Positions 56,868 to 64,000 of a stretch of DNA of 64,000 bases are shown here, one piece after another. This DNA is from Ramazzottius varieornatus (lineage: Eukaryota > Animalia > Tardigrada): positions 1,249,773 through 1,313,772 of the forward strand of contig BDGG01000010.1 of assembly GCA_001949185.1 (NCBI GenBank), given 5' to 3'. The translations under genes were made by a program, and so were the position numbers. Position 1 is the stretch's first letter, and the number at the start of each line of letters is the position of its first letter. The notes beneath the pieces are model-generated. The model had not been told where the DNA came from. It did not search any database and saw only the letters and a program-made list of their open reading frames with translations.

Positions 56868-57957
56868 GCAGATTGCAAGTACCTGCGTACTCCCTTAGCG
56901 GTGGTCAAAGGTTCAAGGTTCAAGGTTCGGCGATGTTGTATGGCGTCAAGATTCAAAATCATTTCTACACGGAAGCAACTCGTCTTAAGTTATAATCTTG
57001 TCTCTAATTTGAACGGCTGAATTTCTTGAATAATTTGTTCACTCTCTCTTGTCTCTTTTCGTTACTGTCTTTAAGGATGCAGCGGGTGCATTGTGTGATG
57101 GCTGGAATCAGTGAGTTTCACTTTGTTGTCGACTGGACACACTGTTCATGGTAAGGCTACCACTGTTTGTAGACGGTCATAGGCTCCTGACTCCTGAGCC
57201 TCTTCTGGATAACGAAGTAGCTGTTCATCTTGTTCAAGATTTATGTATGAAGTTCGAATGTTCCTTCATACGCGAATAAAACGTTCATGTCTGTATCACG
57301 GCGGTCTGATGTCCGAAGTGGAGGTCTGCGTACTTTTTCAGAGCGGCTGTCCAAGATCAAGTACAGCCCAACTGAAAGACGGAATGGCTGACAAAAATGC
57401 TATATCATGGTGATTTGACAAAATCGTTGCTAAATAAAGTCAGTTGATTAGCTGATTCAGACAGAAAAGACGTGCTTTTGCGCATTGATTTTGATAGATG
57501 GGTGAGTTGTATTGTTGTATGGCAAGCCGGAAGTGCTTTCCAGTGTTGGCACCGGAATGTTCACCGGCTTGGTCTACTGTGCCATTCTGCCATTTGCCAT
57601 ATTCCATTTCGAAAAATTTCCATTGGTCCATTTTAGCCGCACCAAGCTGACCAAAATGGTTCAGACAGCTCGGAACTGAGCTGTGAGCTTGACGCTTACA
57701 AGTGTGAGTCACTGCGAAAGAGAAACATTATGTAACATCGACAAGCAATAAACTAATCAAACGGCAACACAGACAATAGCTTTGAAGACGACGAAAGGGT
57801 TATCTTCTGAAACTTGCGTGGTCTCCTGAATTTTCTATCCAATATCCCAGCTTCTTATCCCAGGCCTACTGCGACTACAGCGTGGAAGTGTGATTCAGGT
57901 AGGCCTCGTCTGGATTATTTGCTTGCGGTGTGGTGGCAAGATCTGACACTGCTGCAG

Positions 57958-58854
57958 ATGACCGAGGCGGAGTGCGGCGCGGCTGCAAATGGAGATCTCT
58001 CCACAATGATTACTTCCAGCAAGGTGGACGCAAATTCTTCTGAAAGGACAGTCAAGATACGAGTGATGGAGGACGATACGAACATGCGTCTTGAAGATTT
58101 CACGCAAAGTTTTGCTACAGGTAAGAGCTAACGTTTGGTCCTACCCAGATTAACTCGCGCACGTTGGTTGTCTTGTTTCTGGGTGGATGGTACTTTCCTA
58201 CATCGGCAGTTTAGTAACCGGCCACGTCTCTATACTGTAGGTCAAGTTGTGTGGGCTATCAACAAGGGCTGGCACAACGCCAAGATCATCGCAATGGAGA
58301 CGGACAAATATCCCAGTGACCACAGCTTTCCGGTCCCTGTTTACAAGGTTCACTATCTCCGCTTTGGAAAAAGGCAAGCGCGGAATTATTCCGGACCTCA
58401 AACATGGCTGACTGCACCTTTTGCTTAGGTACGACGAGTGGATGTTTGGCGATTCGATCATGCTCGTTGGCCCTGAGAATGATGCGAAGGCCGCAGCCGA
58501 AAATGAAGCCTTCGTGAAAACCACGTAGGTTCGACAGAAAGAAGCATTGGCCATGGACTTTATCCTATAAGATGGACTAATCTGTCCAAATTTTGATGTT
58601 TCAGGGTGACTAAGCGAATGAGAAAGAAAGCGACAAAGAAAGGGGAGACGGGAATGGAGACGGTGAAGGAGAATGAGAGCATGCCGAAAGCCGTTACTCC
58701 TTTATACTCCACGGAAACCCTTCCAGAAATTTCGGATGTGCGTAAAAATTCGGTGCTGGACAGTAGCTTTGATGGTCCTCATTCAAATATGGCAGAGGTC
58801 GAAGTCAGTACGGAACATGTTCAAGTTAGTCCGAACTTGATTCTGGTTCGATGA
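57958..58854 (+). CDS. Chromo-barrel (Tudor-knot) domain gene inside the transposon; further degenerate exons to ~59504
   Basis: Exons 57958-58120, 58241-58373, 58429-58524, 58605-: FATGQVVWAINKGWHNAKII...YKVHYLRFGKRYDEWMFGDSIM, an MRG15/MSL3/MOF-type pattern. Confidence 0.8.
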
Positions 58855-59947
58855 AATCACTCGCAGTATGCTTGATAGTAATCGTCGCATGATGGTGAGA
58901 AAGCAGAAGATGATGATGATTGGTGGGAGATTGACAGCGGTAAGTGTCAAGCAGCTTTCCTACAGCAAGTGGGTTGGTTGACAACCCACACGCTGAACTT
59001 GACAAGAATGCTTTTCCAAGTGGCGCACGTGCTCAGTGTAGATAGTTGAAAGCGTGTGCCGGTTGGTGGACCAAACTGTACTTGCAATTTTCAGAGGTCG
59101 ACCACCAAAAACTTATAGCTTTGGACAAGACTGTCAACCTTGATGGAGTTGCCCGTAATCCGGAAGCCATCGCGACTCTCGAAACCGGCCAAGACGACGC
59201 AACGGTCCTTCTGGAACCGTGGTAAGGCGCTGTTGAACAGCACAACTAGTCCAGTTCACGCGATATTCAGGCTATTGGTAGCACCGTCCGATATATTGTG
59301 AACACCTACCAGTTCAGTTTGCATTAAAGCCAAGCCACTCCTGATCAAAAGTACGCTCGGAACAACATAACCTCTTTTGCAGAAGAGCTCAAGCCCAACT
59401 TCACTCTTTCCAAGAACGGCCTTATCGAGTTTCCCGACTACACCGGGCTCCGACTGGAATATATTCTGGGATACATTACCAAGGCATCCAGCAGATACGA
59501 CTAAGTCGCAACCCGTTCAAGCTAACTTGGCGCGGTCGACGATGCTGAGAAGAATAAGCCTGCTGTTCTTTCTTTTTTCTGTTCTGTTCTATTTTGGTTG
59601 GGTGTTCTGATTCCGTGAGTGAAACAGTAAACTCACATAAATCGAATCGGAGCCTGGATATCGGTCGTTGCAACTGAACGTAGTAGTGTTTGAGGAACTG
59701 CACAACGGTTTTAGCCTGATCAAGACTAACAAAGCTGCAACAGGCTGGTCGAGTGTGGAATGCGTCATCTAAACTAGTCCATCGCTCAAAACACATTGCG
59801 CGATAAGAAATATAGTTTTTCGCCGAAGCATTAACATTCCGAAAAGCATTATCTAAACCTTCGAGCCAACCCTCGAGTCAATCTACTACTTTCCCAACTG
59901 AGTCATCCAAACTGTTTTCGGTGATGGAAGAAGATCTGATATGCTCA

Positions 59948-60845
59948 CCTTGTCCTTCTACAAAGAAAGAAATTACTCGTTTTGCTGCGGACACCGTGTT
60001 CGAATAATAGCGGTGAAGGCAATAAAGTGGTCCCTCCAGGTCATCTTCCAACGTTTCCCAGCGGTTGTACTTGAAGTGCCATGTTCCGTTGCGGTCAGTA
60101 GCCAGAAGTAGAAACAGCGCGTGCTTTCTGCGACTCTTAGAGTTGCACGGCAGCCATTGCAGATCCCTGGAATTTGATTGGCATTGTAGCATTTGCGTAA
60201 GTTTCAGCAACTTCGATATCGCGCAGACGATCCAGCACGCTAGCTACACCGGCGCCGGTTTTGAAGAACTTCAGATCGTTACTGCAAAAGCATACCAATT
60301 TAGAAACGACTAGTTATGTTTTCGAGTTTTCACTTCTTACCATAGGTACAATGCACCCAGAAGAGAGTTTTCTTTCGAGGTTTTCTGTATTGGGACAACG
60401 CCGAGTTCGGCAAATATCCCGATTGGCTCTCCACTGAAAGAAAGCAGGCTTAATGTCATTGCAAACGTCGCGATTTGATGAGCCTTACAGTCAAGATTCA
60501 AGTGAACCTTCGAGTCAACCTTCAAGCCAACCTTCGAGCCAACCTCCGAGTCAACCTTCAAGTCAACTTTCGAGTCAACCTTCGAGTCAACCGTCAAGTC
60601 AGGTAACCTCTACCTTACCTGATTTCATCCGTAGCACTGGTTTCCTCGGTATCTGAAGAGCTGATAAAACTAACGGAGAGGTTCGAGACATCTGCTTCAT
60701 CACCGCTGTCATCGGACATATCCGCGATGGCCCTGCAGCGATGCACAAACATACGCCAGGTTTACGAATAACGCACCGATTTGCGAGGTTCGACTTACCT
60801 CTTCCTTTGCGAGCTTGAAGGAGGCGAGGATCCTGCCCGTGACAT
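59948..60845 (-). pseudogene. Spliced gene inside the transposon, convergent with the chromo gene; possible transposase 5' remnant
   Basis: Four phase-compatible exons (60845-60799, 60732-60619, 60433-60341, 60281-) with canonical GTAAG/CAG sites; the frame stops at 60137 while other frames stay open. Confidence 0.55.
60505..60600. repeat. 12-bp minisatellite (AACCTTCGAGTC)x8; two more units at 59856-59879
   Basis: Read directly from the sequence. Confidence 0.95.
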
Positions 60846-62522
60846 GTTGTGGTCCGTACTGTGCTTCCAAAGCTAAATGGGTGGATGGGATGTCTGCGAG
60901 GGAATCGAGAAAAGCATATGAACGGGTGTTGTTAAATGACAACAGGAGCGATGAATGGTTGTTTGCAAACAAGTTCATTCGAAAACATGCAAACATGTCA
61001 AATGGCGCTTGGATGCCATGCGCGCCAAGGCCATCGTAGGACTCATTGCCCGCTAAAGTTTGTGGTCGGTTCTTGGTTAGACCGAAATCAAGTCGACTCC
61101 TCCCACTGGACCGATGAAAATGGCAAATGGGAGATGGCAGAATGGCATAGTAGACCAAGCCATGTTCACCTGGCACACACTGACACACTGCTCAAGACTG
61201 AAGAGTCAGTTTAACTCCTCTTCTCCAGCAGATCGCATTCTCTTTCAGATCTTCCGTGGTTCCGACAGCAGCTTCTCCCTTGAACGGGATTGTATCGGAA
61301 AGCTCGTACTGTTCACTGATTCCGAGAAGCCGTATCGCGCAGCGATGTCCTTCAATGTGGAGAAGTAAGTACGTAATCTCGCCAATAACGGTCAATTCGT
61401 TGCCTTCAATATCAAGCATGGGCAACCGGTGCCGTTTCATGGCGTGCTCTCTAAAGCTTTTATGCAGACCTGTTCCCGGGATTGATGTATGTTCCTTTAT
61501 CTCTTCTTCTTTGCGTTGAGAGATGCTAGTAGCATTTGCTGGCGTAACCTGCTTTCTGTTCAGAACGGAGAAGAATGAAACTTTGGAGTGTCGCGCATGA
61601 CGTCACTTTGTGGGATCCTGCCTGGACCGTGTCAAAGTCAATAAAGGAAGGTGGCGTGGTTGTCTATCAACCCGCTTTTTTGTGTTTGTACTCTACAACA
61701 GCGCCCTCTGTCTCACCGTGGTGAGGAGTCAGGTGTGGTGATTTTCGTCAGTACGACGCGAACGGCCCTTCCAATCAATCGTAGGAGACGAATTTGATTG
61801 TTGAATTTGAAACGATGCAAATGACTCATTTGGCACACAAAAGTTTTGGAGGCATTTCCTTCAGAATTTCGAACTTTCAGGAGTTTCAAACTTTAACGCT
61901 TTCAGGAACTGGAGACGTTGGGAAATCATCGTGTACTCTATGCTCCTTTGCTGAAAACATTCTGTCGTTCCTCGTGGAACCGTTGAAATTGTAACACTGT
62001 TCTGTTTGCAGGATTGTTCTCCGTAACGCTTCTGCCTGATCGGAAATTCGCAGCCACAACCGTTGGGCAAAGGACCACTGGATGCGGAGCACTTTCGCGA
62101 TCATTTGTCCCTGTAAGTACTGCGAGAGCGCAGAAAGGTCTGTCATAGGCATTCCTAGGAGACATTCTGCGTTTAATGGCTGATTTCGAGCGAAGCTGAG
62201 CTTTGTGGTGGTAGACTTCATTAGAGGTGAATTCAAGGGCTTCGGGAATTAAATTTTGATTCCCTACGAGGCTGATTTCAAATCGGAGTAACTTGACAAG
62301 CTTTATACCACCATGAGTATGATGATGTGTCTCCGCAAAAGATCAGGGAGTAGTCCGGAGAAAATGGTGTGTAGGGCAGTTTCAAGCGGTGGTGACAACG
62401 GTTCAACGGCTAATTTTCAAAATGATCGAAGCCTTCGCAATCCCAACTGCCGTCAGCTTTCCTGGCGCGTTGTTTTATGGCCTGGTTGCTTCTAGAGTTC
62501 TGTGCTAACTCGGCGGTTGAAG

Positions 62523-64000
62523 ATGTCGTCGAGCGACGAGATGGAGCCCACACCGGTCAAGACCACTCCCAAGAAGAAGACGGGCAAACAGGCCCAGACT
62601 GTGGAGGAGCAGTATGTCAAGTTGAAGCTTGATGAGCAGATTCTGCTACGTCCGGACACCTATATTGGTTCTATTGCCACGGCAGAGAAAGTGGTAAGAT
62701 TAACGTAACATGGCCCGTTCTGCCCATGTAGTTGGGATTTGGGAGATGAGTAAACAAAATGTAGAAGATGGTTATCTCAAGTGGCGCACGTTTTCCTTGT
62801 TACTGGCCGGAAGGGTGCGTCACTCTAGATGGCAATCTTGTCTGTTGGTTGGCCAGCTCCCATTCGTCGTTAGTGCGCGTGGAATACGTGAAGCAATCAT
62901 CTGTTATGATTCTCTGCTTACAGAAAATGAGAATAGTGGACTTGAAAGAATTGAAGATCATCGAGGCGAAGATCGACTACGTTCCTGGCTTGTACAAGAT
63001 CTTTGACGAGATCGTGGTCAATGCAGCGGATAACAAACAGCGCGATCCGAAGATGGACAGGCTGGAAATTACGATTGAGCAGTAAGCGATGGCTGCTGTG
63101 TGCACAATATGTACGATCGAATGGAAGAAAATGAGATACCGGTCTAATGTTTGTAGGGAAAATAACGTGATCTCGGTGTTCAACAACGGAAGAGGCATTC
63201 CCATCACCAAACACGCGAAAGAAAAAGTCTGGATCCCAACCATGATTTTCGGTCATCTCCTGACATCGTCGAACTATCAAGACGATGACAAGAAGGTTGT
63301 AGGGGGTCGAAATGGGTACGGAGCGAAGCTGTGTAATCTGTTCTCGACGAAGTTTACAGTGGAGACAGCTTGCAAGAAGGGTGCCAACTACCCAGCTAAG
63401 ATCTTCAAGCAGGTACGGTACTTCACCAATAAAGCTTTATGTCCGAAACGATGTCTTACGTTGTTATATGGTTTTTCGATAGACATGGGAGCAGAACATG
63501 AAAGTCGGAGAAGAAAACTTCCAGATTCTGGCCAACGAAGACAGGAAAGAGTACACCAAAGTCACCTTCCAGCCAGATCTGCGCCGCTTCAACATGGAGA
63601 AGTTGGACGACCATATCGCTGGTCTGATGGCACGACGAGCTTTCGACTTGGCGGGAACATGTAAAGGTGTCAAAGTCAAGCTCAACACCAAGGAAATCAA
63701 GGTAATGTACCACCTCCGTTACTGTAAGTGTCGTGTTGACTAATTTGCGGTTTTCGTATAGGTGAACGGCTTCGAAGACTACGTCAAATTCCTCGTCAAA
63801 GACGCCAAAGACGAGTACGACAACCCGATCGAGAAGATTGCTTTCGCCAGGTCTGACCCCATCAAAGTGACCAACGAAGACGGCAAAGAGATCTCGCAGG
63901 TTCGCTGGGAAGTGGCTTGCGTGCCGAGTACGAACGGAGAGTTCCAGCAAGTTAGCTTCGTCAACAGTATCGCCACCACGAAGGTACCGTATATCTAGAA
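62523..64000 (+). CDS. top2: DNA topoisomerase II, 5' part (continues beyond window)
   Basis: ILLRPDTYIGS, YVPGLYKIFDEIVVNAADN, NNGRGIP, IFGHLLTSSNY, GGRNGYGAKLCN, YTKVTFQPDL, FQQVSFVNSIATTK. Confidence 0.98.

What the first reader, a model, noticed from the sequence alone, without database searches (positions are those of the whole stretch)
57557..61170. 3.6-kb Mutator-like transposon with two convergent spliced genes (MuDR/Pack-MULE-like layout in an animal)
Seen: TIRs starting GGCTTGGTCTACT (27/28 identity, about 44 bp imperfect, with internal GCCATT repeats), a perfect 9-bp TSD (ATGTTCACC), and two intron-containing genes reading inward from each end. Known: 9-bp TSDs and G-starting TIRs typify Mutator/MULEs; maize MuDR has convergent mudrA/mudrB; plant Pack-MULEs capture host genes; Arabidopsis VANDAL elements encode an anti-silencing factor. 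Inference: this is a two-gene MULE family or Pack-MULE whose second gene is a chromatin reader, which I do not recall being described in invertebrates.
Basis: partly seen in the sequence, partly recalled or inferred. Interest (0 to 1): 0.92.

Follow-up and report, generated by a model that had tools for sequence, protein, structure and literature searches.

The report
Tardigrade Mutator transposon with chromatin-reader gene
This is a real but crippled copy of a Mutator-like DNA transposon in the tardigrade Ramazzottius varieornatus. Its lineage has long carried a second gene for a small histone-reader-like (chromo-barrel) protein beside the transposase, a layout I did not find described for animal Mutator elements.

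Summary
The element spans 57566-61161 with 44-nt imperfect TIRs (27/28 at the tips) and an exact 9-bp TSD, ATGTTCACC. The genome is Ramazzottius varieornatus.

The family has three copies. The window copy is a non-autonomous deletion derivative: it lacks the DDE core (1.7 kb) and a further 3.2 kb. Its plus-strand 4-exon gene (57958-58854, 213 aa) is intact. It encodes an MRG/Eaf3-like chromo-barrel (Tudor-knot) protein.

At least ten further elements of two sister lineages in this genome show the same convergent barrel-gene/transposase layout. They sit inside GGCTTG... TIRs with their own 9-bp TSDs. Barrel and transposase co-diverge (Mantel r 0.98). The barrel exon is under purifying selection between lineages (dN/dS 0.04-0.18). 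It is therefore an old, selected component, not a recent Pack-MULE capture.

The two sister copies do carry a patchwork of host alpha-spectrin fragments, which is a true Pack-MULE trait. What the reader protein does (integration targeting or anti-silencing) is inferred only.

MULEs with extra ORFs are known, but I found none with a chromo-barrel gene: a new variant of a known kind.

First-stage readers of this scan noted the same layout on other pieces of this genome. No RNA evidence or data from other species could be obtained.

The parts
57557..57565 (.). Left target-site duplication ATGTTCACC
   Evidence: Identical 9-mer at 61162-61170, directly outside the TIRs.
57566..57609 (+). Left terminal inverted repeat (starts GGCTTGGTCTACT) with GCCATT-type sub-repeats
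   Evidence: Inverted repeat I1, 44 nt, 89%. The same terminus type matches 26 times in the genome against 0 for the reversed control.
57958..58854 (+). Accessory gene. Its four exons are 57958-58120, 58241-58373, 58429-58524 and 58605-58854, giving a 213-aa product. The chromo-barrel (Tudor-knot) lies in exons 2-3, followed by a Lys-rich then acidic tail. Intron 2 is GC-AG.
   Evidence: The frame is intact across all four exons with canonical acceptors. Exon 2 gives Pfam Tudor-knot E 0.018-0.049. Spliced database models of sister-lineage genes (P0052, P0053) share the exon layout and pass the Tudor-knot gathering score at 30-31 bits against 20.8. A profile of these proteins hits MRG701, Eaf3, MOF, MRG15 and MSL3 barrels in the PDB.
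58883..58884 (.). Internal deletion junction: 3153 bp present in the C5 copy (L036 3322-6474) is missing here
   Evidence: blastn of the copies and junction sequences.
58996..59066 (.). Copy of a dispersed ~70-bp palindromic motif (CCAAGTGGCGCAC ... GTGYGCCnnTTGG)
   Evidence: At least 15 loci at 75-97% identity. No Rfam or tRNA match.
59094..59503 (+). Two family-specific ORF fragments (59094-59225 and 59385-59503) of unknown nature. In the C5 copy they follow an upstream ORF with GRP (AT-hook-like) motifs.
   Evidence: Present only in the window and C5 copies, with no other match in the genome. No Pfam family. Not conserved in sister lineages.
59476..61039 (-). Remnant of the transposase gene: 5' exons (acidic MSDDSGDE... 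exon and the N-terminal region) plus the 3' tail. The DDE core is absent.
   Evidence: Window 59856-60903 aligns to L036 9399-10529 and window 59339-59881 to L036 7166-7714. L036 7715-9398, which holds the MULE-domain exons, has no counterpart in the window. tblastn with relatives finds no DDE in the window. Gene model RvY_18531 (P0044) of the C19 copy starts with the same acidic exon.
59856..59892 (.). Short 12-bp-repeat remnant marking the 1.68-kb deletion that removed the DDE core
   Evidence: The deletion end-points fall in two direct arrays of the CCTTCGAGTCAA unit.
60489..60613 (.). 12-bp minisatellite (CCTTCGAGTCAA-like, about 10 units) inside the transposase gene region
   Evidence: Direct repeat family D1.
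61118..61161 (-). Right terminal inverted repeat
61162..61170 (.). Right target-site duplication ATGTTCACC

Best explanation
The feature is a non-autonomous, internally deleted copy of a three-copy Mutator-like (MULE) family in Ramazzottius varieornatus. It inserted by cut-and-paste transposition and made a 9-bp TSD, about 1.6 kb upstream of a topoisomerase II gene. The family belongs to a clade of MULEs in this genome with a fixed two-gene plan. Within about 0.7 kb of one TIR, a small 4-exon gene reads inward and encodes a stand-alone MRG/Eaf3-like chromo-barrel protein of about 215 aa. From the other TIR, the multi-exon DDE transposase reads inward towards it. The window copy keeps the barrel gene intact but has lost the transposase core, so it could move only with transposase supplied in trans.

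Shown: the TIRs and TSD, the copy structure, the MULE kinship, the barrel domain, the conserved layout, the co-divergence and the purifying selection.

Inferred: the barrel protein serves the transposon by binding methylated histone tails. My preferred reading is that it tethers the transposase complex to marked chromatin and so biases where the element integrates. The origin of the gene is probably an ancient capture of a host MRG-type barrel that was then co-opted.
For: TIR and TSD.

Three copies with different internal deletions; the window lacks the DDE core.

Species, and UniProt naming of the copy-encoded proteins as MULE-domain proteins.

MULE kinship:
- Pfam MULE E 0.013-0.03 on family exons and 7e-5 on a sister-lineage ORF.
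- 43 HMMER relatives, of which 15 of 34 scanned carry Pfam MULE (best 1.8e-7), one SWIM and one Transposase_mut.

Barrel domain: P0052 and P0053 score above the Tudor-knot gathering score. PDB profile hits are all chromo barrels, with MRG701 at 7e-4 and Eaf3 at 1.7e-3. The protein-atlas neighbours are all Tudor-knot/MSL3-like, which is a lead only.

Conserved layout:
- 10 of 13 diverged barrel loci have a MULE DDE 1.3-6 kb away, always convergent.
- 26 GGCTTG-type termini against 0 for the control, forming 8 plus/minus pairs 3.6-9.7 kb apart that enclose these gene pairs.
- Sister elements have 9-bp TSDs.

Selection and linkage: barrel exon dN/dS is 0.04-0.18 between lineages and about 0.5-1 among near-identical copies. 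Barrel and DDE identities co-vary, Mantel r 0.98, p 0.005.

No close host paralogue of the barrel.

Binding to transposase: complex prediction gave weak support only. The score was 0.35 with best control 0.00. That mark was reached by 51 of 78 solved complexes and 2 of 108 mismatched pairs, but at 0.60 or under by only 5 of those 78 and by all 4 mismatches that passed. The runs agree in at least 23% of contacts and the partner's pLDDT is at least 46.
Against:
- No copy of the window's own family has an intact transposase. C5 has a frameshift in the DDE exon and lacks its right end; C19 has large deletions. The family may be extinct.
- Pfam MULE scores on this family's own exons stay below the gathering score.
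- No accessory-gene relative was found outside R. varieornatus, so the age and range of the layout are unknown.
- The co-divergence rests on only three lineages.
- The barrel's ligand and any role in targeting are untested.
- The AlphaFold model was poor (pLDDT 45), so the aromatic cage was judged only by eye from sequence alignment.
- The complex prediction is weak and, by the tool's own calibration, more often wrong than right at this score.
Confidence: 0.75

Rival explanations
1. The anatomy is the same, but the barrel protein is an anti-silencing or chromatin-state factor, working like VANC of Arabidopsis VANDAL/Hiun elements. It would occupy or mask histone marks on the element, or compete with host MRG/Eaf3-type readers, to keep the element transcribed rather than to steer integration.
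For: The protein has only a reader domain plus charged tails and no catalytic or recognised DNA-binding domain. It is conserved under purifying selection. A precedent exists for accessory anti-silencing genes in MULEs (Dupeyron 2019, PMC6446971). Support for direct binding to the transposase is only weak.
Against: There is no sequence relationship to VANC, since Pfam shows only Tudor-knot/MSL3-like. R. varieornatus silencing pathways and histone marks at these elements are unknown. Nothing here distinguishes this reading from targeting.
Confidence: 0.3
2. The barrel gene is ordinary Pack-MULE cargo: a host gene fragment picked up recently and carried passively, with no function for the element.
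For: This family does capture host DNA: alpha-spectrin fragments at 87-89% identity sit in the C5 and C19 copies. Additional ORFs in MULEs are often assumed to be host-derived (PMC6446971).
Against: The barrel gene sits at the same place, in the same orientation and with the same exon structure in three lineages whose transposases are only 35-38% and 64-70% identical. dN/dS is 0.04-0.18 between lineages. No host paralogue is close enough to be hit by the exon, and the seven host Tudor-knot loci are elsewhere. The ORF is complete and intact, unlike the frame-broken spectrin patchwork.
Confidence: 0.05
3. It is not a transposon at all: a pair of host genes that happens to be bracketed by an inverted repeat.
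For: There are only three copies of this family, none of them autonomous.
Against: The copies lie at unrelated loci with different flanks and their own duplications. There are 26 matching termini against 0 for the control. The DDE is of MULE type.
Confidence: 0.01

Closest known systems
MuDR of maize (mudrA transposase plus convergent mudrB)
   Same: It is a Mutator-superfamily element with 9-bp TSDs and G-starting TIRs. Two genes read inward from the two ends. Deletion derivatives that lose transposase are common.
   Different: mudrB has no chromo-barrel and no similarity was seen here. These TIRs are short (about 44-80 nt) rather than about 200 nt. The host is an animal. The genes have several introns.
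Arabidopsis VANDAL21/Hiun (vanA transposase, vanB, vanC anti-silencing factor)
   Same: It is a MULE that carries accessory genes acting on the element's own chromatin state, which is a possible functional analogue.
   Different: No homology to VANC. VANC is a sequence-specific DNA-binding anti-silencing protein, whereas the protein here is a histone-reader-type barrel. VANDALs often lack TIRs.
Other MULEs with extra ORFs or chromatin motifs listed by Dupeyron et al. 2019 (PMC6446971): Mutyl MutB, plant PMD ORFs in antisense, Phytophthora MULEs with SET, Capsaspora MULE-Co with an unknown second ORF, Rehavkus/Phantom with minisatellites
   Same: The precedent is that MULE lineages keep second ORFs, some of them antisense to the transposase and some chromatin-related. 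A minisatellite lies near or inside the transposase region, as here (12-bp arrays).
   Different: None of the 50 groups in that table is listed with a chromo, Tudor-knot or MRG-type domain, and no tardigrade is included.
Chromodomain-bearing integrases (chromoviruses, Maverick/Polinton, Ginger) and the LEDGF/p75-lentiviral integrase tether
   Same: The working principle I propose is the same: a histone-mark reader steers where a mobile element integrates (from general knowledge of these systems).
   Different: Here it is a separate transposon gene, of the barrel (MRG/MSL3/MYST) type, in a cut-and-paste DDE MULE.
MRG15/Eaf3/MRG701 chromo-barrel proteins (H3K36me readers of NuA4 and Rpd3S)
   Same: These are the best sequence matches of the accessory protein's domain. 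The Y and W/F of the HY..GW(F) cage motif are kept, as judged by eye.
   Different: The transposon protein lacks the C-terminal MRG domain. The position of cage residue Tyr26 is His, with a neighbouring Trp. It is about 215 aa with charged tails.
Plant Pack-MULEs and animal Pack-TIRs (Tan et al. 2021, PMC8277862)
   Same: The two sister copies (C5, C19) carry a patchwork of host alpha-spectrin fragments between MULE TIRs and have moved since the capture.
   Different: The window copy itself carries no detectable host fragment. That survey of 100 animal genomes reported no Pack-MULE, so the sister copies would be an unusual animal case.

Membership tests
Mutator-like elements (MULE superfamily) | Terminal inverted repeats at both ends | tested here: met
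   44-nt TIRs, 89% complementary, 27/28 at the tips. The same terminus type occurs at 26 sites against 0 for the control.
Mutator-like elements (MULE superfamily) | Target-site duplication of 8-11 bp, typically 9 | tested here: met
   Window 9/9. C19 copy 8 of 9. Sister elements 9/9 (L063) and 8/9 (L065).
Mutator-like elements (MULE superfamily) | DDE transposase with the MULE domain (PF10551), in the window copy itself | tested here: not met
   The DDE core (L036 7715-9398) is deleted from the window copy, and tblastn finds no DDE there. The copy is a non-autonomous derivative, which is compatible with membership.
Mutator-like elements (MULE superfamily) | DDE transposase with the MULE domain, in the family and clade | tested here: met
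   PF10551 scores E 0.013-0.03 on the C5 and C19 exons, below the gathering score, and 7e-5 on the L063 ORF. 15 of 34 HMMER relatives carry PF10551 at E <= 0.001, best 1.8e-7. UniProt names RvY_10407-1 and RvY_18531 as MULE-domain proteins. D..D(TDGE)..E(NYNE) motifs are visible.
Mutator-like elements (MULE superfamily) | Zinc finger (SWIM, or WRKY/FLYWCH at the N-terminus) | tested here: inconclusive
   A CxC...CxH SWIM-like motif is visible in sister-lineage ORFs (L063:5690-6223, L065:5395-5934), but Pfam gives no SWIM hit. There is no Pfam FLYWCH/WRKY hit on the window's N-terminal ORFs.
Pack-MULE | Host gene fragment(s) carried between MULE TIRs in a non-autonomous element | tested here: not met
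   For the window copy, neither the barrel exon nor the 59094-59503 ORF fragments have a host paralogue. The feature is met for the sister copies only: about 2 kb in 4 pieces, 87-89% identical to the alpha-spectrin gene at C5:1226974-1233406, with the same junctions in C5 and C19.
Chromo-barrel / Tudor-knot (PF11717) proteins | Domain match above the curated threshold | tested here: met
Sister-lineage spliced database models P0052 and P0053 score 30.4 and 31.2 bits against a cut-off of 20.8. The window's exon 2 alone scores 14-15 bits, E 0.018-0.049.
Chromo-barrel / Tudor-knot (PF11717) proteins | Aromatic cage for methyl-lysine | tested here: inconclusive
   By eye from the HMM alignments and alignment A2, the HY and GW (GF in the window family) positions are kept and the third cage position is H with an adjacent W. 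The structure model was too poor to check this (pLDDT 45).
MuDR-type two-gene MULE (mudrB) / VANDAL (VANC) | Homology of the second gene to mudrB or VANC | not tested
   No reference sequences of mudrB or VANC were at hand. Pfam shows only Tudor-knot/MSL3-like on the accessory proteins. The resemblance is in layout only.

The most novel reading that the evidence does not exclude
A clade of animal Mutator elements has for a long time encoded its own stand-alone histone methyl-lysine reader (an MRG-type chromo-barrel) as a second, selected gene. The element would use it to choose chromatin for integration or to resist silencing. That would make it a cut-and-paste DNA transposon with a self-encoded chromatin-reading subunit. 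The same family also contains what may be the first multi-copy Pack-MULE seen in an animal.
Probability: 0.45. Interest if true: 0.8.

Novelty: new variant of a known kind. Interest (0 to 1): 0.62.

Why it matters
How DNA transposons choose their targets and escape silencing is understood for only a few systems. Reader domains are known as fusions to retroelement and Maverick integrases, or as host tethers. A separate, transposon-encoded reader gene in a MULE would be a new solution and could be tested directly, by histone-peptide binding and by transposition assays with and without the gene.

It also extends two-gene MULE architecture, known from maize, Arabidopsis and yeasts, to animals. Together with the alpha-spectrin capture in the sister copies, it shows MULE-mediated gene capture in an animal, where a 100-genome survey found none (PMC8277862).

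For annotation of this genome, about ten 'Tudor-knot domain-containing' and 'MULE transposase' gene models are transposon genes, not host genes.

Tried and rejected
Splicing, expression and empty sites in other samples are untested.
Both flanks were read for only four elements, so TSDs are tabulated for four.
- All searches were exon by exon by reference, or used database gene models of sister elements.
- The AlphaFold2 model of P0052 with a 7-sequence alignment was poor (pLDDT 45.5), so no fold search was run on it.
- A profile of exon 2 alone against the PDB gave only chance hits to laminin. The full-protein profile was informative.
- A scan of JGI metagenome contigs with the accessory-protein alignment found no relative. 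Two protein searches found accessory relatives only in R. varieornatus, plus one 622-bp ENA contig.
- Pfam finds nothing on the window's N-terminal transposase ORFs, on the 59094-59503 ORF fragments, or on exons 1 and 4 of the accessory gene.
- Rfam and tRNA scans of the element found nothing.
- I first read a splice donor at 58827 and took 59094-59503 for later exons of the accessory gene. I rejected this because sister-lineage gene models end in exon 4 and the window ORF stops at 58852-58854.
- Capture of spectrin as cDNA was rejected: the piece boundaries are not at splice sites and the largest piece is colinear with genomic DNA.

Full report
**Observation.** The inverted arms lie at 57566-57609 and 61118-61161: 44 nt, 89% complementary, 27 of the first 28 identical, with GCCATT-like sub-repeats. 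ATGTTCACC lies directly outside both arms, at 57557-57565 and 61162-61170. The element proper is 3596 bp.

**Genome and copies.** The assembly has 55.8 Mb in 200 contigs. Proteins encoded by sister copies are GenBank entries of Ramazzottius varieornatus: RvY_10407-1 and -3, and RvY_18531. UniProt names two of them 'MULE transposase domain-containing'.

Whole-genome DNA searches with the ends and with the whole element find three copies:
- the window copy, C10:1307338-1310933;
- C19:284574-289531, 4958 bp with both TIRs, whose flanking duplication matches at 8 of 9 positions;
- C5:1646671 to about 1655199, at least 8.5 kb, truncated before the right TIR.

The copies are 95-97% identical where they align, and each has different internal deletions. 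Relative to the C5 copy, the window lacks three stretches:
- L036 3322-6474 (3153 bp), a clean junction at window 58883/58884;
- L036 6932-7165;
- L036 7715-9398 (1.68 kb), which holds the catalytic exons. Its end-points fall in two direct arrays of a 12-bp unit.

No copy of this family has an intact transposase gene. C5 has a frameshift in the DDE exon compared with C19. C19 lacks other parts.

**Transposase.**
- The DDE exon of the C19 copy (L037:2477-3082, 201 aa) and its C5 counterpart give Pfam MULE at E 0.013-0.03, below the gathering score.
- A HMMER search of 1.84 billion representatives found 43 relatives. Of 34 scanned, 15 carry PF10551 (best 1.8e-7), one SWIM and one Transposase_mut. 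Named relatives come from the tardigrade Paramacrobiotus metropolitanus and the nemertean Lineus longissimus.
- A sister-lineage ORF (L063:6249-7325) gives MULE at 7e-5.
- Downstream ORFs of sister lineages show a CxC...CxH SWIM-like motif by eye.
- The window itself has no DDE. Its minus-strand 'gene' is the 5' part and the 3' tail of the transposase gene.

**Accessory gene.** The window's plus-strand gene has four exons: 57958-58120, 58241-58373, 58429-58524 and 58605-58854. That gives 642 nt or 213 aa, with GT-AG, GC-AG and GT-AG introns and an intact frame. The C5 copy is also intact; C19 has a 34-bp deletion in exon 4.

Exon 2 alone gives Tudor-knot at E 0.018-0.049. Instead I retrieved database gene models of the sister-lineage genes:
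- RvY_16976 (P0052, 216 aa) and RvY_12404-2 (P0053, 252 aa) have the same exon plan.
- Both pass the Tudor-knot gathering score, at 30-31 bits against 20.8, with MSL3_chromo-like as second hit.
- A profile of these proteins hits only chromo barrels in the PDB. Best are rice MRG701 (7e-4) and Eaf3 (1.7e-3), then MRG2, MOF, ARID4A, MRG15, PHF20, Esa1, MSL3 and Tip60.
- Protein-atlas neighbours are all Tudor-knot/MSL3-like, which is a lead only.

By eye, the HY and GW (GF in the window family) cage positions are kept. The AlphaFold model was too poor to use.

**The layout is conserved.** Six-frame searches of the genome with the DDE exon and with barrel exon 2 find 13 diverged barrel loci. At 10 of them a diverged MULE DDE lies 1.3-6 kb away on the opposite strand, always convergent.

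A degenerate 20-nt pattern of the terminus matches 26 times, against 0 for the reversed control. The matches form 8 plus/minus pairs 3.6-9.7 kb apart that enclose these gene pairs. The barrel gene always starts about 0.7-0.9 kb inside one terminus. Two sister elements read in full have TIRs starting GGCTTGGTATGC and GGCTTGCTATGC, with TSDs of 9/9 and 8/9.

Three lineages can be told apart:

| Comparison | DDE identity | Barrel identity |
|---|---|---|
| A (window family) against B or C | 35-38% | 52-59% |
| B against C | 64-70% | 76-80% |

The two identity matrices co-vary (Mantel r 0.98, p 0.005). This rests on only three lineages.

Nei-Gojobori dN/dS for barrel exon 2 is 0.04-0.18 between lineages. 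It is about 0.25-1, with five or fewer differences, among near-identical copies. That is the usual transposon pattern of selection on the active lineage and neutral decay of inserted copies.

The exon finds no host paralogue. The seven host Tudor-knot loci lie elsewhere.

**Pack-MULE aspect.** The 3.15-kb stretch missing from the window contains, in C5, about 2 kb in four abutting pieces. These are 87-89% identical to a locus 420 kb away at C5:1226974-1233406. The ORFs of that locus are spectrin repeats plus an SH3 domain, so it is an alpha-spectrin gene.

In the element, the pieces are internal parts of exons, frame-broken, and colinear with genomic DNA rather than cDNA. C19 carries the same pieces with the same junctions. 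The capture therefore preceded the separation of two copies that now sit at different loci. A survey of 100 animal genomes reported no Pack-MULE (PMC8277862).

**Mechanism.** Structure and evolutionary pattern are shown; function is inferred. A conserved, selected, stand-alone reader domain points to chromatin. I prefer tethering of the transposition complex to marked chromatin. The main alternative is an anti-silencing role.

A complex prediction between the same-lineage partial transposase (P0006) and barrel protein (P0052) gave weak support only:
- The score was 0.35 and the best control 0.00.
- The mark was reached by 51 of 78 solved complexes and 2 of 108 mismatched pairs.
- At 0.60 or under, it was reached by only 5 of those 78 and by all 4 mismatches that passed.
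- The runs agree in at least 23% of contacts, and the partner's pLDDT is at least 46.

**Literature.**
- MULEs are listed in the curated R. varieornatus repeat library without further description (PMC11071193).
- Dupeyron et al. 2019 tabulate 50 MULE groups with extra ORFs or motifs: mudrB, MutB, vanB/C, PMD, SET, FAR1, OTU, and minisatellites in Rehavkus and Phantom. There is no chromo or Tudor-type gene and no tardigrade (PMC6446971).
- A 2026 arthropod MULE survey does not mention accessory ORFs (PMC13359780).

Within the held library I found no prior description, but the library is incomplete.

**Earlier notes of this scan.** First-stage readers flagged the same layout on at least eight other pieces of this genome. 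These notes are unchecked and are not independent evidence, but they agree with the loci I found by search.

**Limits.** There is no RNA evidence, no other-species context and no empty site.

Noticed in passing
L036:3961-5930 (C5 copy) and L037 (C19 copy); source locus L066 = G000:C5:1225500-1234500: The two sister copies carry four abutting fragments 87-89% identical to the host alpha-spectrin gene (spectrin repeats plus SH3), with the same junctions in both copies. This is a multi-copy Pack-MULE-like capture in an animal, absent from the window copy.
   Followed up: yes
window 58996-59066: A dispersed ~70-bp palindromic motif (CCAAGTGGCGCAC, about 27 variable nt, GTGYGCCnnTTGG) occurs at 15 or more loci, often 2-3 per locus. 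No Rfam or tRNA match. It may be a tiny MITE or a hairpin motif.
   Followed up: partly
window 60489-60613 and 59856-59892: Arrays of a 12-bp minisatellite (CCTTCGAGTCAA-like) sit inside the transposase gene region. The deletion that removed the DDE core has its end-points in two such arrays. Minisatellites near the transposase are reported for Rehavkus and Phantom MULEs (PMC6446971).
   Followed up: partly
window 58374-58428: Intron 2 of the accessory gene uses a GC donor (AG|GCAAGC), splitting the chromo-barrel after ...GKR. The intron position is shared with sister-lineage gene models.
   Followed up: partly
window 62768-63664 (+): ORFs that look by eye like the N-terminal ATPase region of DNA topoisomerase II. 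The element lies about 1.6 kb upstream of them.
   Followed up: no
L036:3459-3663 against G000:C12:236530-236743: An ORF in the C5 and C19 copies with GRP (AT-hook-like) motifs has a 73% DNA match on contig C12.
   Followed up: no
P0055 (ENA contig of 622 bp): This is the only accessory-gene relative not labelled R. varieornatus: 79% identical in the barrel exon and with the same intron position read through. It hints at the same elements in another sample or a close relative.
   Followed up: no
protein-atlas result for P0053: The nearest cluster is a set of about 150-aa Tudor-knot-only 'hypothetical proteins', commonest in Nematoda. It may be worth checking whether these are also transposon-borne.
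   Followed up: no
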